Under the pieces are notes generated by a model that was not told the origin of the DNA, searched no databases, and worked only from the letters and a program-made list of their open reading frames with translations. A program made the position numbers and the translations under genes. Positions 19,027-63,438 of a DNA stretch of 64,000 nucleotides are shown here, one piece after another; position 1 is the stretch's first letter, and every line of letters starts with the position of its first letter. Location: positions 177,427 to 241,426 of IMG/VR virus record IMGVR_UViG_3300007352_000001. One strand, written 5' to 3'.

Positions 19027-19781
19027 TCATCAACGACCGTATCGTTCGGCGGAAGTTGCTGGACATCGCTTGGAGTGTGCTCGATGCCACCCAGGCGCGC
19101 CCTACGTGGCCTCCAGAAGTCCAGCCGATCAGCCAGGTGTTCAGCCGCTCGTACTTCGTCGGCCGTGTCTTCGAGGATCTCGATGTCTGCCACGCCTGCC
19201 AGGTGGCGCGCTCAACGCCGTGCTGGCTCGATCAGCGCGACCAGAAGTGCACCGGCAGTGTCTGTTGCGGCCTGTGTCTCTCGGCGAGCTACTTGGTGCA
19301 GGTCAACACCGAGCTGGCCGCGGTGCCGGCTGGTGCGTTGCCGGCGGAACGCTCCGACGGAGTCGGCTACCATCTGGGCCAGTGGTGGTGGCTCACCAGG
19401 CGCACGCAGAATCAGTACGTGTGGGCGGTCGAGCCTGCCGATGGGACGACGCTGCGCGTCCCGAAGATCAAGCGCACGCTGACGGTGATCGAGCAGTTGC
19501 GCGGGCCGGGCGGCGGTGGGGCACTCACCTGGAAGCTGTGCGACGCGCAGCATGCCCGTCTGGCGAACGACTCGGACCTTTTTTGCGGAGCGCAGCACTA
19601 CGCCAAGGGCGGGTGCCCGATCAGCATGGTGACGCCCGATCTCAAGAACGTCGAGACCGTTTTGGCAGCTCAGGCCGAGTCGATCGTGACGCGATGCACC
19701 GACTTCGTTCGGCAGGTCAGTATCGCCAACTTCTCCCGGCTCAAGTACCAGGCCAATCTTTTCGTCACACCCCAGGTCTGA
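19023..19781 (+). CDS. Cys-rich hypothetical protein
   Basis: CHAC and CCGLC motifs. Confidence 0.65.
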   Translation: MIINDRIVRRKLLDIAWSVLDATQARPTWPPEVQPISQVFSRSYFVGRVFEDLDVCHACQVARSTPCWLDQRDQKCTGSVCCGLCLSASYLVQVNTELAAVPAGALPAERSDGVGYHLGQWWWLTRRTQNQYVWAVEPADGTTLRVPKIKRTLTVIEQLRGPGGGGALTWKLCDAQHARLANDSDLFCGAQHYAKGGCPISMVTPDLKNVETVLAAQAESIVTRCTDFVRQVSIANFSRLKYQANLFVTPQV

Positions 19782-19812: not shown

Positions 19813-20760
19813 ATGAGCAACGCTGACGTGTACAAGAAGGTGACCGAGCGGGTCGTGGGCCTGCTCGAACAGGGAACGGTGCCGTGGCACAAGCCGTGGG
19901 TCGGCGGGCAGCGAGGCCTGCCCCGCAACCTGATCTCGAAGCGGCCGTACCACGGCTGCAACGTGTTCTTCCTCGCCGTGCAGCAGTACGAGTCGCCCTA
20001 CTGGCTGACCTTCCACCAGCTCAAGCAGCTCGCCGGCTGCGACCAGCCCTTCTGCAAGAAGCCGCACGAGCACGGGCTCGTGATCAAGGGCGAGAAGGGT
20101 ACCCCGATCGTGTTCTGGCGGACGCGGCAGTTCACGCAGGTCAACCAGGCGACGGGCGAGGATGAGACGGTCAACGTGCCGCTGGCGCGCATCTACACCG
20201 TCTTCAACGTCGCGCAGGTGACCGGCATCGAGGACAAGCTGCCCGATCGCGCCGCGCTGCCAGACAACGACCTCGCCCCGCTCGACGCGTGCGAGCGCAT
20301 CATCCACAACATGCCACAGCGCCCGGAGATTCGGCACCAGGAGCAGCGCGCGTACTACCGACCGCTTGCCGACTTCGTGAACCTGCCGCTCTTCGACACG
20401 TTCGAGTCGGCCGAGGCCTACTACTCGACGGCCTACCACGAGCTGGGCCACGCGACCGGTCACAAGTCGCGGTTGAACCGCGCGACGTTGAACGACCTCG
20501 TCGACTTCGGCGACACGAACTACTCGCAGGAGGAACTGGTCGCTGAGTTCACCGCGGCCTTTCTCTGCGGCATCGCCGGCATCGAGAACACGACGGTCAA
20601 CACGTCCGCGGCCTACCTGAAGGGCTGGATCAGTCGACTGCAGGCGGATCCGCAGCTGCTGACGCGCGCAGCGTCGCAGGCGCAGGCTGCCGCCGACTAC
20701 ATCTTGCACGTGCAGCCCGAGCAGGCGGTGGAGGGGGAGTCGGATGCCGTCGCGGAATAG
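19813..20760 (+). CDS. ardC: ArdC-family antirestriction/ssDNA-binding protein (DUF1738 plus zincin-like domain)
   Basis: GTVPWHKPW, PRN..S.RPY.G.N, WLTF.Q, KGEKG, VFNVAQ, HELGHATGH, YSQEELVAE, SAAYL.GW. Confidence 0.92.
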   Translation: MSNADVYKKVTERVVGLLEQGTVPWHKPWVGGQRGLPRNLISKRPYHGCNVFFLAVQQYESPYWLTFHQLKQLAGCDQPFCKKPHEHGLVIKGEKGTPIVFWRTRQFTQVNQATGEDETVNVPLARIYTVFNVAQVTGIEDKLPDRAALPDNDLAPLDACERIIHNMPQRPEIRHQEQRAYYRPLADFVNLPLFDTFESAEAYYSTAYHELGHATGHKSRLNRATLNDLVDFGDTNYSQEELVAEFTAAFLCGIAGIENTTVNTSAAYLKGWISRLQADPQLLTRAASQAQAAADYILHVQPEQAVEGESDAVAE

Positions 20761-30187: not shown

Positions 30188-31225
30188 ATGCCTGACACGG
30201 AAGCGATGGAGGCGGTCAACGGCGTGAAGGAAGTGCCTATCACGATCGAGGACGCGCAGGAGTGGGTGAGAACGTCCGACGACCTCGGGCTGGTTGGCAT
30301 GGCCGGCCCGCCGCGGCCGTTCGTTCATCTCTTCTTCACCGTGTTGGAGTACCGGCACTTCCCACCTGACAATCGCGTGCTCAACGACGAGTTCAAGCTC
30401 GCCTCGATCAAGTGGGGCGACGTCGTGTGGATGTTCGTCCGCGTGCCGGCGTCGTACCGGCCGCAGGTCGAGGCGGTCGCTGCCGAGATGGGGCTGCGCC
30501 TCGGCGATGGGTTGCCCACGATGCTCGGCGGGCCAGACGGCCCGCAACGGTTCCCGATCGACGGCGACAACGTGTACACGTTGGAGAACGTCGGCGGTTC
30601 ACAGGTCTACCAGTGGACACCGCAGGAACGCGACCTGGCGCTCAAGGACGAGCTGGCGCGCATCCAGCGCATCGTCGACACCAAGCGGGTCTCTCCCGAC
30701 GACGTCAAGGCGAGCTTGGCGCCGGTCGATGGACGGGTCGGCCACGCGAGTCATCCAGACACCAAGCGCAAGCCGCCACCCGCGGCCGAGCTGCTCGTGC
30801 GGCTGCGTGCGAATCCAAACGAGCGTATTCGGCTCGGCACCATCGGCCAGTTCGAGGCCGAAGATCTGATGGTGCTCGCTGGCGCGTTGGCGCCCGAGTT
30901 CACCGTCGTGTTCGACAAGGACCAGGAGATCTACGCCGGCAAGATGCCGGTGCGGATCTCCATGAGTCCTGGCGCCCGCCAGCTGATCGCCCGCTACCCA
31001 AACCGCGAGCAGGCGATTCTGCACTACGTCACGGCTGCATTCTCGGCCTTCGACAAGGACGCCGTCGAGGCTGGTGGCTACGTCAAGGCGCTCGAAGATT
31101 CGCCCAACGACGTGCGGTTGATGTGCGTCTTCACGCCTGGCGACGGAGTCTTGGCCGAGGCTGAGATCATCAGCGTCGAGGAGTTTGAGCGCACACACGG
31201 CGCCGACCAGGGCCAGGGCAGCTAG
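30188..31225 (+). CDS. hypothetical protein
   Basis: AGGAGG SD; 345 aa. Confidence 0.75.
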   Translation: MPDTEAMEAVNGVKEVPITIEDAQEWVRTSDDLGLVGMAGPPRPFVHLFFTVLEYRHFPPDNRVLNDEFKLASIKWGDVVWMFVRVPASYRPQVEAVAAEMGLRLGDGLPTMLGGPDGPQRFPIDGDNVYTLENVGGSQVYQWTPQERDLALKDELARIQRIVDTKRVSPDDVKASLAPVDGRVGHASHPDTKRKPPPAAELLVRLRANPNERIRLGTIGQFEAEDLMVLAGALAPEFTVVFDKDQEIYAGKMPVRISMSPGARQLIARYPNREQAILHYVTAAFSAFDKDAVEAGGYVKALEDSPNDVRLMCVFTPGDGVLAEAEIISVEEFERTHGADQGQGS

Positions 31226-42442: not shown

Positions 42443-42928
42443 ATGCGTCGAGTCGATCCGCTGGAAGTGGACGTGCTCCTCGACCTCGCCGCTGCTGCAG
42501 GTCCTGGTGCCGCCACCCAGCTCGCTTCAGGCCGTTCGCTGTTCGATGTCAGCGAACGCGCTCAGTTCCTCGTGTCCTCGCAGGCTCTGGCCGAGGCTCT
42601 CGCCGATGTGCAGCCGCTCGTCGACGCGATGCCGCGCCACAGTGAAGGCGATCTGGACACGGCCATCGACCTGCAGGATGCCGCCGCGCAGCTGGGCAAG
42701 GTCATCCCGCGGTTGCAGCTCGCGATCCGTGCCACCGAGAGCATGCAGGAGCGTGCGGCGATCGTCGCCGTCCTCGACGCCGCGCTCGACGCACACCGCC
42801 AGCTGAACGAGTGGTCGAGCCGTGCGGCCGAGTACAACCCGCCGCACGCCGCCGAGATCATCCAGAACTTCCACGGCCTGGTCATGATGGCGAAGGACCT
42901 GGCCCAGCTGGACCAGAACTACCGGTGA
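42443..42928 (+). CDS. helical hypothetical protein
   Basis: GGAGGG SD. Confidence 0.7.
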   Translation: MRRVDPLEVDVLLDLAAAAGPGAATQLASGRSLFDVSERAQFLVSSQALAEALADVQPLVDAMPRHSEGDLDTAIDLQDAAAQLGKVIPRLQLAIRATESMQERAAIVAVLDAALDAHRQLNEWSSRAAEYNPPHAAEIIQNFHGLVMMAKDLAQLDQNYR

Positions 42929-43515
42929 GCACCATCCGCGCCCTGGTGTGCGCCGCAGCCTTGCTGCTGAGCGCACCGGCCTGGGCAGGGGAAATCTACC
43001 TGCACGCCGCGGGCGCCCTCACCAAGGGCTCTGGTGGATGCACACGGGTGCAGAACGACGGCACCGCCGGCCCGATCGTCTCGATGCAGTGCTCGCAGAC
43101 GGGCACGCAGGAGCTGTTCTGGTGGGTGCCGATCCCGTCGGACTTCGGCAGTACGATCACGCCGACGATCACCTACCACACCGGCTCGGTGTCGGCTGGC
43201 AACCTGTGCTTCCGGATCCGGCTGACGGCGTTCGCCACCGACGGCTCGGCAGCCAACATGCTGACGGCCGCGGCAGCCACCAACACGGTGACGATCACCG
43301 ATGCCAACCTGACCGCGGTGGTGAACTCGCCGAACCAAGGGGCGGGTACCTCGCTGACGCCGCAACAGCGCACCAGCGCAGGGCTCACCAGCTGCGCGGT
43401 GCAGAGCTGCCAGAACCTCTACGGCCTGGTGCAGGTCGAGCGCATGAACGACGGCAGCTGCAGCTCGAACCTCGCGACCAATGCGCAGGTCGACATGCTG
43501 CGGCTTGCCTACTGA
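42925..43515 (+). CDS. secreted Cys-rich beta protein, paralog 1
   Basis: signal peptide AWA/GEIY; CT...C...PIPSD...Y...C; ends MLRLAY. Confidence 0.75.
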   Translation: MSTIRALVCAAALLLSAPAWAGEIYLHAAGALTKGSGGCTRVQNDGTAGPIVSMQCSQTGTQELFWWVPIPSDFGSTITPTITYHTGSVSAGNLCFRIRLTAFATDGSAANMLTAAAATNTVTITDANLTAVVNSPNQGAGTSLTPQQRTSAGLTSCAVQSCQNLYGLVQVERMNDGSCSSNLATNAQVDMLRLAY

Positions 43516-43524
43516 CGAAAGGCG

Positions 43525-44109
43525 ATGCGGATGGATGCGGAGCGGTTGCTGCTGAAGGTCCGGAAGTTCGGTGACGTTCAGGCGGAACATGTGGCCTGGA
43601 CCGAGCCGTTGTCGTGGAACTCGGCGACTCCGGCCGGTGTTGGGTTCACCGAGCACAAGCTGTCGTTCATCGACGTGCTCAACCACGCCTTCCAGCTCTA
43701 CGCGCAGGGCGACGTGGTCCCCGACGTTGGGGATGAGCTGGTTGATGTCAGCCGCAAGGTCGCGAGCCGCGACCTCGTCTTCCTCGGCGAGCGCGCCACG
43801 TTCATCATCGAGACGCTGCCGGGGTTCATCATGCACCCGCCGCAGCAGCTCGGCAGTGCGACGCGCCTCGGCCGTCTGAACGGACACTGGACGGTGGTGC
43901 GGGAGTCCGCGTTGCCGCTGAACGAGTTCATCGTGGTGCACGTGCAGCCGCAGACGCGCACGGTGTTCGCCACGCCAGGCGTGGCCGGTAAGCAAGAAGA
44001 CATCGCGGAGTTTCTCCAGCGCCGCGCCGCCTCGCTGATCCAAGCGGTGGCCTCGACCAAGGCGCCGGCCAATCGACAGGTCAATCCCCACGCATCGTGC
44101 GCTGGGTGA
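43525..44109 (+). CDS. hypothetical protein
   Basis: 194 aa ORF interrupting the paralog array. Confidence 0.65.
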   Translation: MRMDAERLLLKVRKFGDVQAEHVAWTEPLSWNSATPAGVGFTEHKLSFIDVLNHAFQLYAQGDVVPDVGDELVDVSRKVASRDLVFLGERATFIIETLPGFIMHPPQQLGSATRLGRLNGHWTVVRESALPLNEFIVVHVQPQTRTVFATPGVAGKQEDIAEFLQRRAASLIQAVASTKAPANRQVNPHASCAG

Positions 44110-44118
44110 CGAGGTCTC

Positions 44119-44706
44119 ATGGGCGGGTGGCGGTGGTGGAGTGGAGTGGTTGTGGCCGTGGCACTGGGTGCTGCGGCGCCCGCCCATGCAGGCAAACTCG
44201 AACTGTGGGCTGACTCGGCCTACACGCTCTCGGGCTCGGGCTGCACGAAGGTCGTGAACAACGCCGCCTCGAACGAGGCGTACACGACCATCAACTGCCC
44301 GGATGCCGCGGGCGGGACCTTCGTGGTTCCGTTCGCGATCCCGGAAGTGGCCGCGGCCACGGGCTGGACCTACCGCATCCACTACGCGGTCTCGAACAAC
44401 TCGACCTCGTCGACGTGCGCCTGGGACGTGCAGCTCCAAGCGCAGACGAGCGACGGGACAGTGGTGATCACTGGCGGGCCGACGACCACGGTCACCGCGG
44501 GGCCGCGCGATCACACCGCCGGCAAGATCGACCTCTCGCCGACCAGCGCGGCGATGACCGGCATTCGCGACAGCCAAGCCGGCGCGAACTGCTCGGGATC
44601 CACCTGCACGGACACCGGGGGCGTCGCACTCGTCACGCTGAACAACACCAGCACGAGCGGCATCACCGGCACCTGCAACTTTCGGCTGTTGGAGATCACG
44701 TACTGA
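44119..44706 (+). CDS. secreted Cys-rich beta protein, paralog 2
   Basis: AHA/GKLE; CTK..TINC..GW...CAW..NCS..C..CNFRLLEITY. Confidence 0.8.
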   Translation: MGGWRWWSGVVVAVALGAAAPAHAGKLELWADSAYTLSGSGCTKVVNNAASNEAYTTINCPDAAGGTFVVPFAIPEVAAATGWTYRIHYAVSNNSTSSTCAWDVQLQAQTSDGTVVITGGPTTTVTAGPRDHTAGKIDLSPTSAAMTGIRDSQAGANCSGSTCTDTGGVALVTLNNTSTSGITGTCNFRLLEITY

Positions 44707-45290
44707 TGCGCTCACTGCTCACCACGCTGTGCTTCGCTGTGCTCGTGCTGGCTCAGCCGGCGTGGGCAGGACGGCTCTATCTCTTTGCCGAGAACGCCAT
44801 CCTGCCGTCGGGCTCGACGTGCACCAAGAACATCGAGATCCAGTCGGATCGCGCCTACACGACGATCAACTGCCCGCCGGGCGGCAACAACATCTTCGCG
44901 ATCCCGTTCCCGTTCCCAACCGATGCGCCGAGCACGGGATGGACGTTCCGCGTCCACTACCAGGTGAACCAGACCACCGCGTCGTCGCGCTGCGCGTGGG
45001 ACGTCACCATGAAGACGTTCCCCGACAACAGTGACGCCACGATCACCGGCGGCTCGGTCACCACGCTCCAGAGCACCTCGCAGACGCACACCGTCAACCG
45101 CCGGTACGTCTCCCCGGCGAGCGGCGCCATCAGCCAGATCCTCGGTCCGAGCGGCAGTCCCTGCACCGGCACGCCGTCGAACTGCGCGGATCTCAGCGCG
45201 GTGGCGAAGCTCGACATGAACGACGGATCGAGCACCAACATCAGCAACCCGAACAGCTGCAACTTCCGCATGCTGGAGGTTCGGTACTGA
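44706..45290 (+). CDS. secreted Cys-rich beta protein, paralog 3
   Basis: TGATG coupling; AWA/GRLY; ends CNFRMLEVRY. Confidence 0.8.
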   Translation: MRSLLTTLCFAVLVLAQPAWAGRLYLFAENAILPSGSTCTKNIEIQSDRAYTTINCPPGGNNIFAIPFPFPTDAPSTGWTFRVHYQVNQTTASSRCAWDVTMKTFPDNSDATITGGSVTTLQSTSQTHTVNRRYVSPASGAISQILGPSGSPCTGTPSNCADLSAVAKLDMNDGSSTNISNPNSCNFRMLEVRY

Positions 45291-45937
45291 TGCCGCGTTC
45301 GCTGTTTGCGAATAGCAAACGTGCCGGCGTCACGGGCCTTTTCTCCCTGTTGGGGTGTGCCCGTTTGCGGATTGCATACGCCGCGGCGCTGCTCGTGCTG
45401 GTCGCCACGCCGGCTCACGCCGGCCGCATCTACGTGTTCGCCGAGGCGTTCTACCTGACGACGACTTCGACGTGCACCAAGACGGTCAACTCGACCACGC
45501 AGAACTCGACGACGACGATCAACTGTCCGTCGAACGTGCTGACCACCGGCTTCCGCGCCAACGTGGCGTTCCCGCCCGATGCGCCGAACAGCTGGTCGTA
45601 CAGGGTCTGGTACACGACGCCGGACACGGCCTCGAACAAGTCGTGCAGCTGGCAGATCCAGGCGCGCTCGCGCCCCCACGACTCGCGCAACGACCTGGGC
45701 GGCGGTGAGGACACCGCTACCGTGATCGGTGGACCGATCCAACACGCCAACAACCGCCAGTACAAGACCGACATCTCGACGGCGACGGCCGTCTACAACA
45801 CGGCGACTTCGGCCAACTGTTCGAGCACGGCGTGCCAGGACACCGAGGTGCGCCTCAACATCGCGCTCATTCCGGTGCTCTTCAGTGCCGACTCCGCGAG
45901 CGAGTGCGACTTCCGATATCTGGAGATCGAGTACTGA
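45290..45937 (+). CDS. secreted Cys-rich beta protein, paralog 4
   Basis: AHA/GRIY; ends CDFRYLEIEY. Confidence 0.8.
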   Translation: MPRSLFANSKRAGVTGLFSLLGCARLRIAYAAALLVLVATPAHAGRIYVFAEAFYLTTTSTCTKTVNSTTQNSTTTINCPSNVLTTGFRANVAFPPDAPNSWSYRVWYTTPDTASNKSCSWQIQARSRPHDSRNDLGGGEDTATVIGGPIQHANNRQYKTDISTATAVYNTATSANCSSTACQDTEVRLNIALIPVLFSADSASECDFRYLEIEY

Positions 45938-46521
45938 TGCGCACGCTACGGATTCTCTTCGTCGCGCTCGCTGTACTCCTCGTGGGCTCCAAGGCTCACG
46001 CCGGCCGCATCTACGGCTGGGCTGAGGCAGCGAAGCTCACCTCATCGTCCTCGGGTTGCACGCTCACCGACAACCAGGGTGTGCGCTCGGGCGGCAACTA
46101 CGCCTACCGCACGATGAACTGCACCGACGGTGCGAACCGCGAGTTCGTGCTGCCGTTGTGGATCCCGCCCGATGCGCCCAACACGGGCTGGACGGCGCGC
46201 GTGCATTACGAGACGACCGACACCAGCGCCAGCAAGGTCTGCGCGTGGAACGTGTCGATTGGCGCCTACAAGGACGGCGCCTCGCCGCTCGGCTCGCAAG
46301 GGTCGACCACGGCGATCGCTGGTAGCTCGCGCACGCACGTGGCTGGCACGCGCTACATCACCAGCCCGTCGGCGACCTTCTCGCTCTACGATGTGCTCGC
46401 GGCTGGCGCCTGCGCCTCGACCAACTGCCTGCAGAAGACGGCCAAGGCCTACGTCACGCTCGACAGCTCGGCCACCACCGCCACGGGGTGTGACTTCCGC
46501 ATGCTGGAGGTTCGGTACTGA
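45937..46521 (+). CDS. secreted Cys-rich beta protein, paralog 5
   Basis: AHA/GRIY; ends CDFRMLEVRY. Confidence 0.8.
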   Translation: MRTLRILFVALAVLLVGSKAHAGRIYGWAEAAKLTSSSSGCTLTDNQGVRSGGNYAYRTMNCTDGANREFVLPLWIPPDAPNTGWTARVHYETTDTSASKVCAWNVSIGAYKDGASPLGSQGSTTAIAGSSRTHVAGTRYITSPSATFSLYDVLAAGACASTNCLQKTAKAYVTLDSSATTATGCDFRMLEVRY

Positions 46522-47126
46522 TGCGCACGCTGAAGCTCCTGGTCGTGCTCGCGCTGTGCCTCCTGCCAGCCACCGCGCACGCCGTCACCTACTTCGCCTT
46601 CGCCGAAGACGCCACCCTCGCCACGGCGACTGACATCTGCGCCATCACTGAGCACCAGGGCACGTCGAGCAACTACACTACGGTCGACTGCACGGGCTCG
46701 GGCGAGACGCGTGTCGCCATCCCGCTCTACCGCCCGGTGTACGACCCGAGCAGCTGGCCGAAGGCGGCGACGGTGAAGGTCCACTACGAGACGCCCGACA
46801 CCAGCTCGAACACGCACTGCGACTGGGACGTGGCGATCTACATCATCAACACGTACACCTCGTCGGGCACGGTGCAGCCGGCCCTGGTGAATGCGTCTTC
46901 GGTGTCGACGACGGCCGTCACGGGCACAACCCAGACGCACGCGGCGGACACGCGCTACATCACGCCCGCCACCTCGACGTTCAACTTGAAGGATCCAGCT
47001 GGCTCGGACTGCAGCAACGGCAATGCGGGCTGCGCCGATGGCGAGGCCGTGGTCATCATCGACTGGGACGACGCGTCGTCGACCGCGAGCGAGTGCCGGC
47101 TGCGGGCGGTGGAGGTGAACTACTGA
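46521..47126 (+). CDS. secreted Cys-rich beta protein, paralog 6
   Basis: AHA/VTYF; ends CRLRAVEVNY. Confidence 0.8.
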   Translation: MRTLKLLVVLALCLLPATAHAVTYFAFAEDATLATATDICAITEHQGTSSNYTTVDCTGSGETRVAIPLYRPVYDPSSWPKAATVKVHYETPDTSSNTHCDWDVAIYIINTYTSSGTVQPALVNASSVSTTAVTGTTQTHAADTRYITPATSTFNLKDPAGSDCSNGNAGCADGEAVVIIDWDDASSTASECRLRAVEVNY

Positions 47127-47800
47127 TGCGCTCGCACATCGCTGAGCTGCGGTTGTTCGTGAAGCAGCTGCATGAGCTGGGCCGTCTGCTCGGGATCCCG
47201 AAGCAGGCGATGCGCCAGTACATCGGCAGCCGCCTGTTCGTCGTGGCACTGGTCGCGCTCCTGGGTGGCTTCGGTGAAGCGCACGCTGGCATGATCCAGC
47301 TTGGCGCCGAGGCCGCACAGTTCGCGAGCCCCGCGCCTGCCACGTGCACCAAGGTCACGACCGCGGCAAGCAACTACACCGACACCTCGATTAACTGCAC
47401 GTCGTCTGGATCAGACGTGAAGTTCTACCTGCCGGTGGCGATCCCACCAGATTACACCGGCGGCTCGGGCATCTTCACCTCGGTGTACTACACGTCGCCT
47501 GACCCGTTCACGAACCGGCGGTGCTACTGGGCCTTGGCGCTCTCGGCCCTGCGCGACGGTGCCACCGCCGCCTCGCTCGATACCACGACGGTGTTCACGG
47601 CCGGCCCGCAGGTTCAGCACGTGGCGGGTCGACGGTACTGGGCGCAGAACAACGTGCTCCCGTACGACGTGCTAGCCGGCGCGAACTGCTCGGGCAGCAA
47701 CTGCTCGGATACTGAGGCCATTTTGGAGGTCACGTTGCGCGCCTCGCCGAACACCTCGGCGACGCAGTGCAACTTCGACTTCGTCACCCTTCGCTACTGA
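47126..47800 (+). CDS. secreted Cys-rich beta protein, paralog 7
   Basis: AHA/GMIQ; ends CNFDFVTLRY. Confidence 0.8.
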   Translation: MRSHIAELRLFVKQLHELGRLLGIPKQAMRQYIGSRLFVVALVALLGGFGEAHAGMIQLGAEAAQFASPAPATCTKVTTAASNYTDTSINCTSSGSDVKFYLPVAIPPDYTGGSGIFTSVYYTSPDPFTNRRCYWALALSALRDGATAASLDTTTVFTAGPQVQHVAGRRYWAQNNVLPYDVLAGANCSGSNCSDTEAILEVTLRASPNTSATQCNFDFVTLRY

Positions 47801-47816
47801 GAAAGGGACGTACGCC

Positions 47817-48266
47817 ATGTGGAAGGTTCTGGTGCAGGTTGTGGCTGGGGCAGCGATGCCCTTCATTTTGCTGGGGGCGACACTGGCGTATGTGCCGCCT
47901 CAGTACGTGATCGGCTCTGCCGCGCCACCGGAGTGCAAGGCGTGCAGCTGCCCCGGCGACCTGGACGGCAACGGTGCAGTGTCGGTAGGCGAGCTGATCG
48001 CGGCGGTGAACTCGCTGCTGCACGGTTGCCCAGCGCCGGCCCCGACGTTCACGCCGATCACCAAGCGCACCGCGGTCGTCTTCTGCCCAGGGGACTGCAA
48101 CGGAGATGGAGTGGTGACCATCGCAGAGAAGGACCAGGCGATCGCGATCATCAACGGGGCGCCCCTCTCGACGTGCATGGCCGCGGACGCCAACGGCGAC
48201 GGCCGTGTGCGCAGCAACGACATCACCATGATCATCCAGGCGATCAACGACGGCTGCCCGCAATGA
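47817..48266 (+). CDS. secreted or membrane protein with dockerin-like Ca-binding repeats
   Basis: CPGDLDGNGAVSVGELIAAVN, CPGDCNGDGVVTIAE, ADANGDGRVRSNDI..IIQA. Confidence 0.75.
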   Translation: MWKVLVQVVAGAAMPFILLGATLAYVPPQYVIGSAAPPECKACSCPGDLDGNGAVSVGELIAAVNSLLHGCPAPAPTFTPITKRTAVVFCPGDCNGDGVVTIAEKDQAIAIINGAPLSTCMAADANGDGRVRSNDITMIIQAINDGCPQ

Positions 48267-48700
48267 GCACATTGTCGGCTGAGTTCCGCATGTTCCCGCC
48301 GACCTACGCGGACATGTACGGGTTCCCGCGGCAGCCGCCCAGCTCGGGCTGGCAGCAGTGGCAGCAGCAACAATGGGTCGACGACCGCACCTCGGTGCAG
48401 CCGCCGTACGTGCCGTCGTACGGGGAACCCATCTGGATCGTGCAGCCGTCGGTCACGGTGCCGATGGTGCCGTACCCGCATCCGCAGAAGCTGCCGACGG
48501 TGCCGTCACCAACGCCGTTCCAGCCACAGCGGACCTACACCGTCGAGGAGCTGGAACTGATGCTGGCTGCGGCGCAGCAGCACGCTCTGCACGACGGCGC
48601 CCCGAGCGATCACGTCCCCACGCCTTTCGAGCACTTGCAGAAGGGGCAGATCGGCTACGCCTCGCGTCGCGACGTCGTCGAGCGCGACGGCGCACCGTGA
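48263..48700 (+). CDS. Pro/Gln-rich protein with HLQxGQxGYASR motif
   Basis: ATGA coupling; FEHLQKGQIGYASR. Confidence 0.6.
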   Translation: MSTLSAEFRMFPPTYADMYGFPRQPPSSGWQQWQQQQWVDDRTSVQPPYVPSYGEPIWIVQPSVTVPMVPYPHPQKLPTVPSPTPFQPQRTYTVEELELMLAAAQQHALHDGAPSDHVPTPFEHLQKGQIGYASRRDVVERDGAP

Positions 48701-48870
48701 GGATTCAGGGCCGGCTCCGTACCCCGAAGCCCGTCGTCTTCCACGATGAGGAGTGCACGGTGCGGTTCAACGAGCACCTGCAACCTGGCCAGGTCGGCTA
48801 CGCGTCACGTGAGGGAACACATGGCTGGACCGCTGCTCGATCCGACTCGCCCGCACCACCCGTCGCTTGA
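48697..48870 (+). CDS. small protein with HLQxGQxGYASR motif
   Basis: GTGA coupling; FNEHLQPGQVGYASR. Confidence 0.55.
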   Translation: MRIQGRLRTPKPVVFHDEECTVRFNEHLQPGQVGYASREGTHGWTAARSDSPAPPVA

Positions 48871-49177
48871 CGACCTAGTCGATCCGAACTGTCACCGCCT
48901 GGTTCGCCACTTCTTCGAGAAGCCGCGGACACCTAGCGCCGACGGCGTCGCCTTCGATCGTGACGGCAAGCGCCCGTTCAACTTCCACCTGCAGCGCGGG
49001 CAGGTGGGCTACGCCAGTCGCACCGTCGTCGACACGGCGATCGGCACGGTGGCGGTGAGTACGCCGGAGTGCGGGACCGTGCCGCAGCTGGTCACCAACG
49101 GACCGCCGCTCACGAACAACCCACTGCTCGACATCGCCAACCGGCGCATCCGTGCACTGACACACCGTGAGGAGTGA
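48821..49177 (+). CDS. hypothetical protein with HLQxGQxGYASR motif
   Basis: GAGGG SD; FNFHLQRGQVGYASR. Confidence 0.6.
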   Translation: MAGPLLDPTRPHHPSLDDLVDPNCHRLVRHFFEKPRTPSADGVAFDRDGKRPFNFHLQRGQVGYASRTVVDTAIGTVAVSTPECGTVPQLVTNGPPLTNNPLLDIANRRIRALTHREE

Positions 49178-58304: not shown

Positions 58305-58940
58305 ATGACCGCACTCTGTGAGTTGGCCAAGACCTACCGCACCGACAAAGGGCCGTGGGGCTTCGATGGCGACGCCTCGCCGGGCCACGGCTACACGCGC
58401 ACCTACGATGCGCTCTTCCGCTCGATGCGCCATGACGCGATCGTGCTCTTGGAGATCGGCATCGCCAAGGGCGCCTCGCTGCTCATGTGGAGCGAGTACT
58501 TCGCCGAAGGCACGATCCTCGGCCTCGACATCTCGTTGGCCAACGTCGATCGCTCCACGCTCGCCGGCACGCAGGGTGGCGGCTGGGAACAGCTGCCGCG
58601 GCACGCCGACATCCAGCTCTACGAAGGCAGCCAGGACAACACGGCGCTGCTCCGACAGATTGCCGAGGACAACGGTGGCGTGCTCGACATCGTCATCGAC
58701 GACGGCAGTCATCGCGCGGAGCACCAGGTCCAGACCTTCGAGACGCTGTTCCCGTACGTGGCGCCGGGCGGCTACTACGTGATCGAGGACATCGGCCACG
58801 GCGATGCGGTGTCCGGCAGCGTCTTCACGAGCCGGATGCTCGACGCACAGGGGCTCTTCGCCGACGTCGACGAACTGTACTGGGCGATTCGCCAGCGGAC
58901 GAGCCAGTCGGTCATTCTCCGTAAGAAGGCACGCGTATGA
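58305..58940 (+). CDS. class I SAM-dependent O-methyltransferase (MycE/TylE-like)
   Basis: TDK...H.Y...Y, LLEIGI..GASL.MW..YF, GLDI, GSQ, DIVIDDGSH, GGYYVIED. Confidence 0.85.
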   Translation: MTALCELAKTYRTDKGPWGFDGDASPGHGYTRTYDALFRSMRHDAIVLLEIGIAKGASLLMWSEYFAEGTILGLDISLANVDRSTLAGTQGGGWEQLPRHADIQLYEGSQDNTALLRQIAEDNGGVLDIVIDDGSHRAEHQVQTFETLFPYVAPGGYYVIEDIGHGDAVSGSVFTSRMLDAQGLFADVDELYWAIRQRTSQSVILRKKARV

Positions 58941-59530
58941 AGAAGACGCACGAGCGCATGCGTGAGATCGCGTACGGCTGGCACGGCGGGCAGAGTTCGC
59001 CGCTGTACTCGTTCGCGTCGACCGGCAAGATCCACGGCCCCGAGCACCGCCACGGGCTGCTGCGCGAGATCGACAGCTCGCTCAATCATCCCGACAAGCA
59101 CACGCTTTGGGATGCCGGTGAGCTGCGCGAGCTGCAATCACTGCGCAGCCACCTCGCCATTGCCCCAGACAAGCACGGCGCGTTCCCAGCGCGCGAGCAG
59201 CCGGCGATCCAAGCTGGCCGTGTCGGGGCCTGGAGCATCGGCGGCGTGAAGGAAGGGGCTGACGCCTTGCTGAACGGCGCGCCGGTGCGCAAAGTCGTCG
59301 AGACCGTCTCGTTCCGAGAGCCTCGTCGCCGGCCGCGGCAGCCGGCGCGGACCGTCACGTACGGCGATTCGACGTACAAGGTGAAAGGCAAGGTCGAGAT
59401 TCCAGACCTCACCAAGATGGAGCGTATGGACGCGCTCATCTGGCTGAACCGCAACACGCACGCACGGGGCTACTCGAAAGCCAACCCGCTCGCCGGCATC
59501 GGTGGCGTGATCAGCCTCAAGACGCGCTAG
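58937..59530 (+). CDS. modular hypothetical protein
   Basis: WHGGQSSPLYSFASTG; KE/GADALLNGAPVRKVVE/T. Confidence 0.65.
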   Translation: MKKTHERMREIAYGWHGGQSSPLYSFASTGKIHGPEHRHGLLREIDSSLNHPDKHTLWDAGELRELQSLRSHLAIAPDKHGAFPAREQPAIQAGRVGAWSIGGVKEGADALLNGAPVRKVVETVSFREPRRRPRQPARTVTYGDSTYKVKGKVEIPDLTKMERMDALIWLNRNTHARGYSKANPLAGIGGVISLKTR

Positions 59531-61853: not shown

Positions 61854-62317
61854 TGGCGTGCTCTTGGTGTCCGAATCCGATGGCTCAGACGACCCCGCTG
61901 ATTGTCACCGATCGCGGCGCTGAGGCCTCTGGTCGGAAGACCGGTGACACGGTCAATCTCTGCCCTGCGTGCGCGACGAGCGCATTGCGCCGTCGGCACG
62001 CGAAGGCGGCAACCAAGCCGCGGGAACAGATCGAGGCAGTCGCCCGCGGCATGCGGCCGGCTGACGTCCTCGCCGAGAATGATCCGAACGACGACTTTGT
62101 CGCGGACACCGACGGCTCGCCGCTGCGGATCCCACCCAAGGGTCATCCCGATCGGTGCCCGGACTGCGGTGGCAGCCGTGCGCTGCGCGTCGGGTACACG
62201 TGGTGCGGGGCGATCCCGAACACGCCGTGCAACATCCCCGGCGGCGGGGAGCCGCACCAAGACGATCTGATCAACGCGAAGATCAAAGCCCATCCGTACC
62301 GCTACCGGCGCCGCTGA
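61853..62317 (+). CDS. zinc-finger hypothetical protein
   Basis: CSWC, CPAC, CPDC. Confidence 0.6.
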   Translation: MACSWCPNPMAQTTPLIVTDRGAEASGRKTGDTVNLCPACATSALRRRHAKAATKPREQIEAVARGMRPADVLAENDPNDDFVADTDGSPLRIPPKGHPDRCPDCGGSRALRVGYTWCGAIPNTPCNIPGGGEPHQDDLINAKIKAHPYRYRRR

Positions 62318-63438
62318 TGGCTGAGTGGCACAAGCGCGGCTGGCTCGCTCCGTCGGGCACGCTGCACTCGATCGCAGCCGAAGGGACGCACACCGACTGG
62401 TTGCTCGCGCACCCGGAACACTGGGAGCCGGGCAAGCACCAGGAGGCGGTCGACCGCATCAACAAGGGCGAAGGCAAGCACTACGCGGTCCGCGACGCCA
62501 ATGCCCGCCTGCTGCGCCACGGGTGGGTGCGCCAGGCGGGCCGCGGCATGTACGAGCTGAGCGACCGTCGCCATCTGCGCCGCGTCCTCGACCACGTCAT
62601 GACGAACTACCCCGACATTGACCGGGTCACCGTCGACATCGGGGTGGACAAGCCGACCACGCACACGATCTCGGTGCACGAGGAGACGATTCCACTGGGG
62701 CAGTGCTACTCGTGGGCGACCAAGAATGCGCGCGAGGGAGACACCGTCGTGCACGGCACGGTGCAGCATCCATGGGACGGGCACAGCTTCTCGCACGCTT
62801 GGATCGAGCGAGGCGATCGCGTGCACGACTTTCAGACCTCGATCGGCCTCGGACCGGGCAAGCAGGGTTGGACGCGAGCAGCCTTCCAGGACGCCTACAC
62901 GCCGTCCCAGACGCGTCGTTATGCGCCGCACGAGGCCAAGGCCCACATGCTGCGCCATGGTCACCACGGGCCATGGGAGTGGGTGGAACGCGTGCTTGCT
63001 GGGGAGCGGCCTGCAGATGTCATCAACGAGGCCGTAGGCTTGGTGCGCAAAAGCACTCAAGACTTCCTCTTGAACGATCCTGATGGCGGCGAGACCGACG
63101 CCGAGATGTATAACTTCGGGCGTGGGCGGGAACGCTACCGGCCTCGTCACGGCAAGGTGCACGAGTTCGACATTGTCCATCGCCAGCATGGGCGGGTCGG
63201 TACGATGCACGTGGCGCACACCGATCGAACGCAGCGGACGCTCTACGTACCGTGGATCGAGATTGAGCCCGCTCATGAGCGGGCTGTGAACCCGATGAGT
63301 CTGCGCACGTCGCTGCAGGCGCACTTTCCTCGTGCGCGTGAAGTGCGCGGCTGGCGCATCACTGGCCGCAGGCCAGGCGTCCGTTCGTACACGCTGCCGC
63401 CGCCTCGCAGCAACCCGCGACAAGGAAAGCTGTTCTGA
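62317..63438 (+). CDS. modular protein with central Cys-His-Asp (transglutaminase-like) domain
   Basis: GQCY...VVHG...HAWIE....V.D; junctions VHE/E and INE/A. Confidence 0.65.
   Translation: MAEWHKRGWLAPSGTLHSIAAEGTHTDWLLAHPEHWEPGKHQEAVDRINKGEGKHYAVRDANARLLRHGWVRQAGRGMYELSDRRHLRRVLDHVMTNYPDIDRVTVDIGVDKPTTHTISVHEETIPLGQCYSWATKNAREGDTVVHGTVQHPWDGHSFSHAWIERGDRVHDFQTSIGLGPGKQGWTRAAFQDAYTPSQTRRYAPHEAKAHMLRHGHHGPWEWVERVLAGERPADVINEAVGLVRKSTQDFLLNDPDGGETDAEMYNFGRGRERYRPRHGKVHEFDIVHRQHGRVGTMHVAHTDRTQRTLYVPWIEIEPAHERAVNPMSLRTSLQAHFPRAREVRGWRITGRRPGVRSYTLPPPRSNPRQGKLF

What the first reader, a model, noticed from the sequence alone, without database searches (positions are those of the whole stretch)
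48263..49177. Three consecutive unrelated ORFs share a 12-residue HLQxGQxGYASR motif
Seen: HLQKGQIGYASR (nt 48632-48667), HLQPGQVGYASR (48775-48810) and HLQRGQVGYASR (48986-49021), each preceded by a nearby Phe, in three overlapping ORFs that are otherwise dissimilar. Codons differ synonymously (Ser TCG/TCA/AGT, Leu TTG/CTG), so conservation is at the peptide level. Inference: a short linear motif for docking on a common partner, a host-protein mimic, a processing signal, or RiPP-like core peptides.
Basis: seen in the sequence. Interest (0 to 1): 0.68.

Follow-up and report, generated by a model that had tools for sequence, protein, structure and literature searches.

The report
Shared peptide tag on small phage proteins
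Three neighbouring small genes of an uncultivated 241-kb jumbo phage carry the same strongly conserved 12-residue peptide, which recurs in two more of the phage's proteins and nowhere else searched, and most likely serves as a common docking label whose partner is unknown.

Summary
HLQKGQIGYASR, HLQPGQVGYASR and HLQRGQVGYASR lie at the stated coordinates, each in the coding frame of a small + strand ORF. Third codon positions vary freely, so selection acts on the peptide. The window is the last 64 kb of a complete 241,426-bp phage genome, distantly T4-like, 65% GC. The core GQ[VI]GYAS occurs five times in it: ORF1-3, a 68-aa basic protein and a 123-aa Cys-rich protein.

A looser skeleton, G-[RQ]-V-G-x-aromatic-S, ends a tandem array of seven small genes in the head-neck module and occurs in a few further proteins. 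That link is suggestive, not proven.

ORF1 and ORF3 have no relatives. A profile search of 1.84 billion proteins and DNA pattern scans of three collections found only this phage. Independent metagenome contigs show the same frames without indels, so this is not one broken gene.

No RiPP enzyme, host look-alike or RNA family was found. My best reading (about 0.4) is a portable recognition tag on otherwise unrelated small proteins, working like the T4 capsid targeting sequence. The partner is unknown, and one co-fold gave no verdict. It is a new variant of a known kind, of moderate interest.

The parts
48263..48700 (+). ORF1, 145 aa, rich in Pro and Gln. Its ATG overlaps the stop of the upstream dockerin-like gene (ATGA). 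The tag lies 11 residues from the C-terminus.
   Evidence: coding score +43.6, GC3 0.88. JGI called it as a gene. It has no relatives. The Atlas model has pLDDT 0.56 and pTM 0.18.
48632..48667 (+). Motif copy 1, HLQKGQIGYASR (core GQIGYAS at 48644-48664)
48697..48870 (+). ORF2, 57 aa from the GTG at 48697, or 36 aa from the GTG at 48760, which follows GAGGAG by 6 nt. It fills the ORF1-ORF3 gap in the -1 frame. This is the least certain of the three genes.
   Evidence: The segment 48697-48822 scores +5.0 in frame against -22 and -25 in the other two frames. JGI did not call it. In a soil contig about 95% identical, 48748-48858 shows no listed change, and of the five changed codons in 48711-48747 three are synonymous in this frame.
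48775..48810 (+). Motif copy 2, HLQPGQVGYASR (core at 48787-48807)
48821..49177 (+). ORF3, 118 aa, with the tag in the middle (residues 56-67). GAGGGA lies 4 nt upstream of the ATG.
   Evidence: score +29.2. JGI called it. It has no relatives. The Atlas model has pLDDT 0.36.
48986..49021 (+). Motif copy 3, HLQRGQVGYASR (core at 48998-49018)
58937..59530 (+). 197-aa protein with an internal GRVGAWS at 59216-59236. It is a possible member of the looser tag family.
   Evidence: The 15-seed HMM gives 11.8 bits, E 0.0035 within the proteome.
30731..30751 (+). GRVGHAS inside a 345-aa protein (30188-31225). This is a weak match and may be chance.
   Evidence: Regex match; HMM E 0.02.

Best explanation
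ORF1, ORF2 and ORF3 are real small phage genes, probably translationally coupled. Each carries one copy of an old, strongly selected peptide module: core G-Q-[V/I]-G-Y-A-S, extended to F-x(1,2)-H-L-Q-x-G-Q-[VI]-G-Y-A-S-R.

The module behaves as a portable label set in otherwise unrelated proteins that are mostly predicted to lack a confident fold. Two other proteins of the same phage carry it: a 68-aa basic protein in the head-neck module and a 123-aa Cys-rich protein between two glycosyltransferases.

A looser form, hydrophobic-x-P-x-G-[RQ]-V-G-x-[FY]-S-x-x-G-P-A...P-COOH, ends seven tandem small genes just upstream of the 68-aa protein.

I infer that the label is a docking peptide read by one common partner, so that a varied set of small proteins is brought to the same machine. 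The machine is most likely a component of virion assembly, because most carriers sit in or next to structural genes. The way it would work is that of the capsid targeting sequence shared by the diverse T4 internal proteins.

Shown: the copies, their frames, selection at the peptide level, restriction to this lineage, and conservation of the array in a relative. Inferred: that the two motif types are one family, that the label binds a partner, and which process it serves.
For: - Copies: five exact-core copies, all in coding frames, with a large score gap to the next hit.
- Peptide-level selection: among ORF1-3, 7 of 10 invariant residues use different codons, including TCN versus AGY for Ser. 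Third positions vary across all copies.
- Variable position of the tag: N-terminal in ORF5, central in ORF3, and 11 residues from the end in ORF1 and ORF4.
- Low-confidence models for ORF1 and ORF3.
- Looser family: the regex G[RQHS][VIA]G.[YFA]S matches 18 times in the proteome against 0.15 expected (500 shuffles, maximum 3). The regex was written after seeing the members, so only the three extra matches are independent. In 11 of 15 clear carriers the core lies 9-13 residues from the C-terminus.
- Link between the types: a type-A HMM ranks the type-B proteins 4th, 10th, 13th, 33rd and 158th among the non-seed proteins scored (206 scored in all; Mann-Whitney p 0.012). ORF4 lies about 800 nt after the array.
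- Relative: a contig 81% identical in nucleotides keeps five array genes, with dN/dS 0.25 in the bodies and 0.17 in the tails.
- Context: the array lies between the major capsid gene and the neck, sheath and tube genes. The gene just before ORF1 shares an 89%-identical 44-aa stretch with a 1129-aa tail-region protein.
- Precedent: T-even internal proteins are diverse and share only a capsid targeting sequence (PMC3012670).
Against: - No partner was identified. The single co-fold (two tail tube copies plus the ORF1 tail) gave no verdict.
- No virion proteomics or expression data exist.
- HMMs built from each motif type alone do not find the other type at a significant E-value, so the wider family and its structural-module context may not apply to ORF1-3.
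- A core this strictly conserved (7 invariant residues, including Gly, Ala and Ser) is tighter than most docking motifs. It would also fit an enzyme recognition site.
- The closest structural-module relative (G001, 40% complete) has no such tags.
Confidence: 0.4

Rival explanations
1. The module is a recognition site for a modifying enzyme that acts on the invariant Ser or Tyr, for example O-glycosylation by the phage's own glycosyltransferases. The carriers would then be substrates rather than cargo.
For: - Gly, Gly and Ser are invariant in all 16 aligned tags, and an aromatic residue usually precedes the Ser.
- ORF5 lies between a GT2-like and a GT4-like glycosyltransferase, with another GT2-like gene 2 kb further on.
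- The conservation is stricter than is usual for docking motifs.
Against: - Only one of the loci is next to glycosyltransferases.
- The glycosyltransferase matches are far below the curated cut-offs, and their targets could be DNA or host glycans.
- No known sequon resembles the motif.
Confidence: 0.15
2. The tag copies a conserved helix-loop-strand segment of the phage's own tail tube protein. It would bind whatever that segment binds (a neighbouring tube ring, the sheath, a chaperone or a host sensor), either to attach cargo to the tail or to act as a decoy or regulator.
For: - The tube protein carries NPVT-GRIGLAS-QYKK.
- The segment is conserved in gp19-like tube proteins of relatives: GQIGLAR in G001 and IGFA or IGWA in SP-15, LIS04 and HSE3.
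- The W-H/R-x-Q before it resembles the F-x-H-L-Q before the tag in ORF1-3.
- The low-confidence tube model places it in a loop after the helix.
Against: - The tag HMM scores the tube protein at only 7.0 bits, E 0.13.
- The similarity needs a 5-6 residue deletion.
- The cultured relatives have no extra copies of their tube segment.
- The co-fold gave no verdict.
Confidence: 0.12
3. The tag is a degradation or C-terminal processing signal, read by a host or phage protease, that sets the lifetime or maturation of the carriers.
For: - The tag lies near the C-terminus in most carriers.
- The array tails have a fixed length of 12 residues after the Ser and usually end in Pro, as does ORF1.
Against: - In ORF3 and ORF5 the tag is far from the C-terminus.
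- There is no L/I-x-E or S/A/G-x-E site of the kind cut by T4-like or giant-phage prohead proteases next to the tag.
- No protease is linked to the loci.
Confidence: 0.08
4. ORF1-3 are RiPP precursor peptides and the motif is their core or recognition sequence.
For: They are small tandem genes with a shared short peptide. The array of seven looks superficially like multiple precursors.
Against: - No maturase-like protein was found among the flanking genes that were scanned, and ORF1-5 themselves match no family.
- The carriers range from 57 to 473 aa, and the tag position varies.
- In the array the variable N-terminal bodies are conserved between relatives (dN/dS 0.25), unlike disposable leaders.
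Confidence: 0.03
5. The three ORFs are pieces of one decayed or mis-assembled gene that had an internal repeat.
For: ORF1 and ORF3 share a frame and are separated by a single TGA. ORF2 sits in the -1 frame between them.
Against: - Contigs from three other runs cover both junctions with no indel.
- Coding scores and GC3 are normal for ORF1 and ORF3.
- The ORF1-frame reading of the gap scores -22 to -25.
- ORF3, and ORF2 at its alternative start, have plausible ribosome-binding sites. ORF1 and the longer ORF2 instead start by overlapping the preceding stop codon.
- No related longer protein exists.
Confidence: 0.03
6. The conserved unit acts as DNA or RNA (a binding site or structured RNA) and is only incidentally translated. 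Alternatively it mimics a host protein.
For: There is some nucleotide similarity in the core (GGN CAG GTN GGC TAC GC).
Against: - Third positions vary and Ser switches codon family.
- The five exact-core copies and the clear looser copies score as coding in the motif frame, and the only off-frame matches to the looser skeleton look like chance.
- No Rfam match was found.
- The strict pattern has no credible coding match in species genomes, metagenome contigs or viral contigs.
Confidence: 0.04

Closest known systems
Capsid targeting sequence (CTS) of the phage T4 internal proteins (IPI, IPII, IPIII, Alt)
   Same: Both are short conserved peptides shared by small, otherwise diverse phage proteins, some encoded side by side, in a T4-type phage. 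In T4 the peptide is the only conserved part and serves as an address (PMC3012670).
   Different: The T4 CTS is an N-terminal peptide of about 10 residues that the prohead protease removes after L/I-x-E (from my own knowledge of T4). Here the tag is mostly C-terminal or internal, has no such cleavage site and shows no sequence similarity. Packaging of the carriers has not been shown.
Short linear motifs (SLiMs) of viral and cellular proteins
   Same: The module is 7-12 residues long, sits at variable positions in regions without a confident predicted fold, and occurs in unrelated proteins.
   Different: It is conserved far more strictly than typical SLiMs. The copies probably arose by duplication within one genome rather than by convergence, and no partner domain is known.
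T4 gp19-type tail tube protein, helix-loop-strand segment (NP-x-x-x-x-IG-[LFW]-A-x-x-YKK)
   Same: The phage's own tube protein has GRIGLAS, and the relative G001 has GQIGLAR. These match the tag skeleton and part of its upstream flank.
   Different: The similarity is not statistically significant by HMM (E 0.13). The carriers share nothing else with the tube fold.
Multi-copy RiPP precursor genes
   Same: Both are tandem small ORFs with a shared short peptide.
   Different: No maturase was found. The conserved part is not a leader, the variable parts are under purifying selection, and one carrier is 473 aa long.

Membership tests
T4-type capsid targeting sequence | Conserved peptide at the extreme N-terminus of the precursor | tested here: not met
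   The tag is C-terminal, internal or (in ORF5) begins at residue 14.
T4-type capsid targeting sequence | Ends in a prohead-protease site (L/I-x-E) | tested here: not met
   No shared x-E site follows or precedes the tags. Only ORF1 has V-V-E six residues downstream.
T4-type capsid targeting sequence | Carriers are packaged in the head and injected | not testable with these tools
   The phage is uncultivated and there is no virion proteome.
T4-type capsid targeting sequence | Shared by otherwise unrelated small proteins, some in tandem | tested here: met
   All-against-all BLAST finds only the motif shared among ORF1-5. The array of seven is shown in alignment A2.
Short linear motif | Short, in disordered context, position-independent, function by binding a folded partner | tested here: inconclusive
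   The length and variable position are met. Disorder is suggested only by low-pLDDT models. The partner is unknown (one search gave no verdict).
RiPP precursor | Adjacent maturase or recognition-element genes | tested here: not met
   PHROGs and NCBIfam scans of the flanking genes that were tested found none. Not every neighbour was scanned.
RiPP precursor | Conserved leader with a short core, the rest of the peptide dispensable | tested here: not met
   The bodies of the array proteins are conserved in the relative with dN/dS 0.25. Carrier sizes range from 57 to 473 aa.
Repeat domain of a single gene | One continuous reading frame, or relatives that have one | tested here: not met
   The frames are confirmed by independent contigs. 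No longer relatives exist.
gp19 tail tube family (PF06841) | Similarity over the tube fold | tested here: not met
   Only a skeleton of 7-11 residues is shared. The tag HMM scores the tube protein at E 0.13.

The most novel reading that the evidence does not exclude
The phage runs its own addressing system. A peptide label, possibly derived from a surface segment of its tail tube protein, is attached to sixteen or more small, fast-evolving proteins with DNA-binding-like, zinc-ribbon or unstructured bodies. The label loads them onto or into the virion for delivery into the host with the DNA. It would be a C-terminal counterpart of the T4 capsid targeting sequence, unrelated to it in sequence.
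Probability: 0.15. Interest if true: 0.8.

Novelty: new variant of a known kind. Interest (0 to 1): 0.55.

Why it matters
If the tag is an address label, it marks a whole set of otherwise unannotatable small proteins of a jumbo phage as working through one partner. These could be a cargo of injected proteins, a substrate set or a set of regulators. It would also give a second, independent example of the T4 principle of diverse proteins sharing one targeting peptide.

Such a label could in principle be used to load foreign proteins into phage particles, as the T4 CTS is. It also shows that reading for short in-genome peptide recurrences can organise the 'dark matter' of phage genomes where homology searches return nothing.

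Tried and rejected
**Relatives and family searches**
- PHROGs on ORF1-5 and their neighbours found nothing. NCBIfam and PHROGs on the genes flanking ORF4 and ORF5 found only weak glycosyltransferase matches next to ORF5.
- Word-based search of 5.8 billion proteins with ORF3 and ORF1 found only the proteins themselves.
- A profile of five motif segments against 1.84 billion representatives returned only this phage's ORF1, ORF3 and ORF4. A foreign exact 12-mer would have scored near the E 0.001 limit, so weaker copies could be missed.
- IMG/VR searches with ORF1 and ORF3 found no relatives, and the INPHARED phage collection gave no match to the region's DNA or to ORF5.
- A PDB profile search with the 16 tags found nothing even at E 10.
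- ESM Atlas gave no usable hits.
- Literature searches for the peptide strings found nothing relevant.

**DNA pattern scans**
- IMG/VR had 0 matches for the strict motif, 1 chance-like match for QxGQ[VI]GYASR and 0 for the array-type tail.
- The metagenome and species-genome scans gave one match each. One has a stop codon inside the motif. The other has Thr in place of Ser and lies in a frame whose translation does not look like a protein.

**Other tests**
- Co-fold of two tail tube copies with ORF1 residues 96-145 scored 0.00, which is no verdict. This is not evidence for or against binding.
- AlphaFold2 of the tube protein with a two-sequence alignment gave pLDDT 42.6, too poor for a fold search.
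- Related structural-module contigs G001-G003 hold no tags, but they are 6-40% complete.
- Cultured relatives SP-15, LIS04 and HSE3 have no extra copies of their tube segment.
- Rfam and the promoter and terminator scans of the locus found nothing.
- Three off-frame matches to the loose regex (genome 23824, 55679- and 178876) were rejected on coding score.

- No alternative genetic code was used.

Full report
**Where the window lies.** The window is the last 64 kb of a single-contig virus record of 241,426 bp with 65% GC. IMG/VR classes it as complete, with direct terminal repeats. PHROGs scans identify these genes:
- a gp23-like major head protein and a head maturation protease;
- a portal, a baseplate wedge and hub, and a DNA polymerase;
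- a Dda-like helicase;
- tail tube and neck proteins.

The capsid protein's nearest cultured relatives reach only 36-38% identity (Bacillus phage SP-15, Listeria phage LIS04). The best IMG/VR relative, G001, reaches 67% capsid identity. It has 37% GC and is only 40% complete. The object is therefore an uncultivated jumbo myophage, distantly T4-like.

**The observation.**
- ORF1 (48263-48700, 145 aa) starts on an ATGA overlap with the stop of the upstream gene.
- ORF2 (48697-48870) starts on a GTGA overlap with the ORF1 stop. A second possible start is the GTG at 48760, 6 nt after GAGGAG.
- ORF3 (48821-49177, 118 aa) has GAGGGA 4 nt before its ATG.

A codon-usage score trained on the genome's long ORFs gives +43.6 for ORF1, +29.2 for ORF3 and +5.0 for the ORF2 segment before ORF3. 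The other same-strand frames score about -20 to -67. JGI's gene caller called ORF1 and ORF3 but not ORF2.

The back-translated core pattern occurs 3 times in the window against 0 in 100 shuffles.

**Selection is on the peptide.** Among ORF1-3, seven of the ten invariant residues are spelled with different codons, and Ser uses both TCN and AGY. Between ORF1 and ORF2 I count five synonymous differences in roughly eight synonymous sites. By that count the copies are old, not recent duplicates, while the flanks have diverged beyond alignment.

No Rfam family matches the locus. The five exact-core copies and all clear copies of the looser form are read in a coding frame. The only off-frame matches to the looser skeleton scored as chance.

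**It is not a broken gene or an assembly error.** ORF1 and ORF3 share a frame, separated by one TGA, and ORF2 lies in the -1 frame. That arrangement could suggest a frameshifted repeat gene.

Contigs from three other sequencing runs cover 48558-48695, 48671-48858 and 48720-48976. They carry 1-9 substitutions and no indel. In the soil contig, about 95% identical, no listed change falls in 48748-48858, which holds the ORF2 motif. Three of the five changed codons upstream are synonymous in the ORF2 frame. No longer relative exists.

**More copies in the genome.** A six-frame HMM scan finds exactly five copies at 32-40 bits, and the next hit scores 10.6 bits. The two outside the window are:
- ORF4, at genome 52993-53199: 68 aa, pI 11.6, ending ...LRRGQVGYASRGRRKRTIDDA;
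- ORF5, at genome 125720-126091: 123 aa, with zinc-ribbon-like Cys pairs, and the core at residues 14-20.

ORF5 lies between a GT2-like and a GT4-like glycosyltransferase. In G001 the gene order around ORF4 is kept, but there is no ORF4 and no motif there.

**A probable wider family.** Just upstream of ORF4, seven tandem genes of 74-116 aa (genome 50331-52194) have unrelated bodies. Each ends in ...P-x-G-R-V-G-x-[FY]-S-x-x-G-P-A-x-x-T-x-x-x-P (six of the seven end in Pro).

Similar ends or internal copies occur in five further proteins:
- a 473-aa structural-module protein (GRVGAAS);
- a 160-aa protein on the minus strand (GHVGAYS);
- a 78-aa protein at 19185 (GRVGWYS);
- window 58937-59530 (GRVGAWS);
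- weakly, window 30188-31225.

The skeleton G[RQHS][VIA]G.[YFA]S matches 18 times in the proteome against 0.15 expected from residue shuffles. I wrote the regex after seeing the members, so only the three extra matches are independent evidence. In 11 of 15 clear carriers the core lies 9-13 residues from the C-terminus, ORF1 and ORF4 among them.

The link between the array type and the window type needs caution. HMMs built from one type alone do not find the other at a significant E-value. The array HMM does rank the five window-type proteins 4th, 10th, 13th, 33rd and 158th (p 0.012). I treat the union as likely, not shown.

**Conservation in a relative.** The alignment search found a 1,705-bp Logan contig (SRR24775931), 81% identical in nucleotides, carrying orthologues of five array genes in the same order. 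dN/dS is 0.25 for the bodies and 0.17 for the last 22 codons. These small genes are therefore real, and their variable bodies are functional rather than disposable.

**Nothing like it elsewhere.** The tag was found in this phage lineage only.
- The profile search of 1.84 billion representatives returned only this phage's own proteins.
- The strict DNA pattern had no credible coding match in IMG/VR, JGI metagenome contigs or 185,579 species genomes.
- A PDB profile search, ESM Atlas and the literature gave nothing.

**A lead: the tail tube protein.** The regex also hits the phage's tail tube protein (NPVT-GRIGLAS-QYKK). That segment is conserved in gp19-like tube proteins of relatives: GQIGLAR in G001 and IGFA or IGWA in SP-15, LIS04 and HSE3. 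It aligns with a loop region of a solved T4-like tube protein (9ev2, E 0.11). In a poor model it follows the helix.

The tag may derive from or mimic this segment, but the tag HMM gives the tube protein only E 0.13. The cultured relatives have no extra copies of their tube segment. A co-fold of two tube copies with the ORF1 tail returned no verdict.

**Mechanism.** I commit, at about 0.4, to a portable recognition peptide that brings a varied set of small proteins to one partner, most likely in virion assembly. Three points of context favour this:
- Ten of the sixteen carriers lie in the head-to-neck part of the genome.
- The gene before ORF1 shares an 89%-identical 44-aa stretch with a 1129-aa tail-region protein.
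- T4 gives the precedent: its internal proteins are diverse and share only a capsid targeting sequence (PMC3012670).

The tag fails the membership tests for the T4 CTS itself, being neither N-terminal nor followed by an L/I-x-E site. The claim is 'works like', not 'is a'.

The rivals, in order:
1. An enzyme recognition site on the invariant Ser or Tyr, possibly for glycosylation (0.15).
2. A tube-segment mimic acting as anchor, regulator or decoy (0.12).
3. A degradation or processing signal (0.08).
4. DNA- or RNA-level function, or host mimicry (0.04).
5. RiPP precursors (0.03).
6. A decayed repeat gene (0.03).

**Verdict.** The tag is new in sequence and placement, and its logic has a known precedent. 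Interest is moderate: this is a clear, testable organising feature in a genome otherwise full of ORFans, but it comes from one uncultivated lineage and its partner is unknown.

Noticed in passing
window 42925-47800 (seven genes, excluding 43531-44109); also genome 25772, 26307, 72987, 151099: An eleven-member paralog family of proteins of about 190 aa. They have signal peptides, paired cysteines and a C-terminus of the form R-x-L-E-[VI]-x-Y. Seven lie in tandem just upstream of the finding and four lie in the structural regions. No PHROG or NCBIfam match was found for the members tested.
   Followed up: partly
window 47817-48266: The 149-aa protein just before ORF1 has an N-terminal hydrophobic helix and three dockerin or EF-hand-like repeats (weak Pfam Dockerin_1). 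A 44-aa stretch is 89% identical to the N-terminus of a 1129-aa tail-region protein (genome 73673-77062), which suggests recent exchange.
   Followed up: partly
window 43531-44109: A 192-aa protein inside the paralog array resembles residues 312-409 of the major capsid protein (31% identity, E 2e-10), as if an insertion domain of the capsid protein had been copied.
   Followed up: no
L003:10331-12194 (genome 50331-52194): A tandem array of seven small genes has unrelated bodies and a shared 20-residue C-terminal tail (GRVG-x-[FY]-S-x-x-GPA...P). Five of the genes are kept in an 81%-identical Logan contig (L023).
   Followed up: yes
L004:3436-4062 (genome 63436-64062): The tail tube protein carries GRIGLAS in a segment conserved across gp19-like tube proteins of relatives. 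It is a possible source or mimicry target of the tag.
   Followed up: partly
L007:4633-8722 (genome 124633-128722): A cluster of GT2-like and GT4-like glycosyltransferase genes surrounds ORF5. Their target (DNA, virion proteins or host glycans) is unknown.
   Followed up: no
L003:13192-13707, L002:695-2344, window 62317-63438: Three proteins share a module of unknown function (GW[VI]R[KQ]A..AYH...HP). The 549-aa member also has a domain that matches the C-terminal part of a solved phage portal protein (PDB 9b41, E 4e-25).
   Followed up: partly
window 19813-20760: A 315-aa protein matches a PHROG annotated as an anti-restriction protein (phrog_7245, E 2e-78).
   Followed up: no
L017 (JGI record Ga0104751_1000014): The same 241,426-bp contig is held by JGI with a different start point: ORF1 is near 51.5 kb there and at 225.7 kb here. 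This fits a terminally redundant or circularly permuted genome.
   Followed up: no
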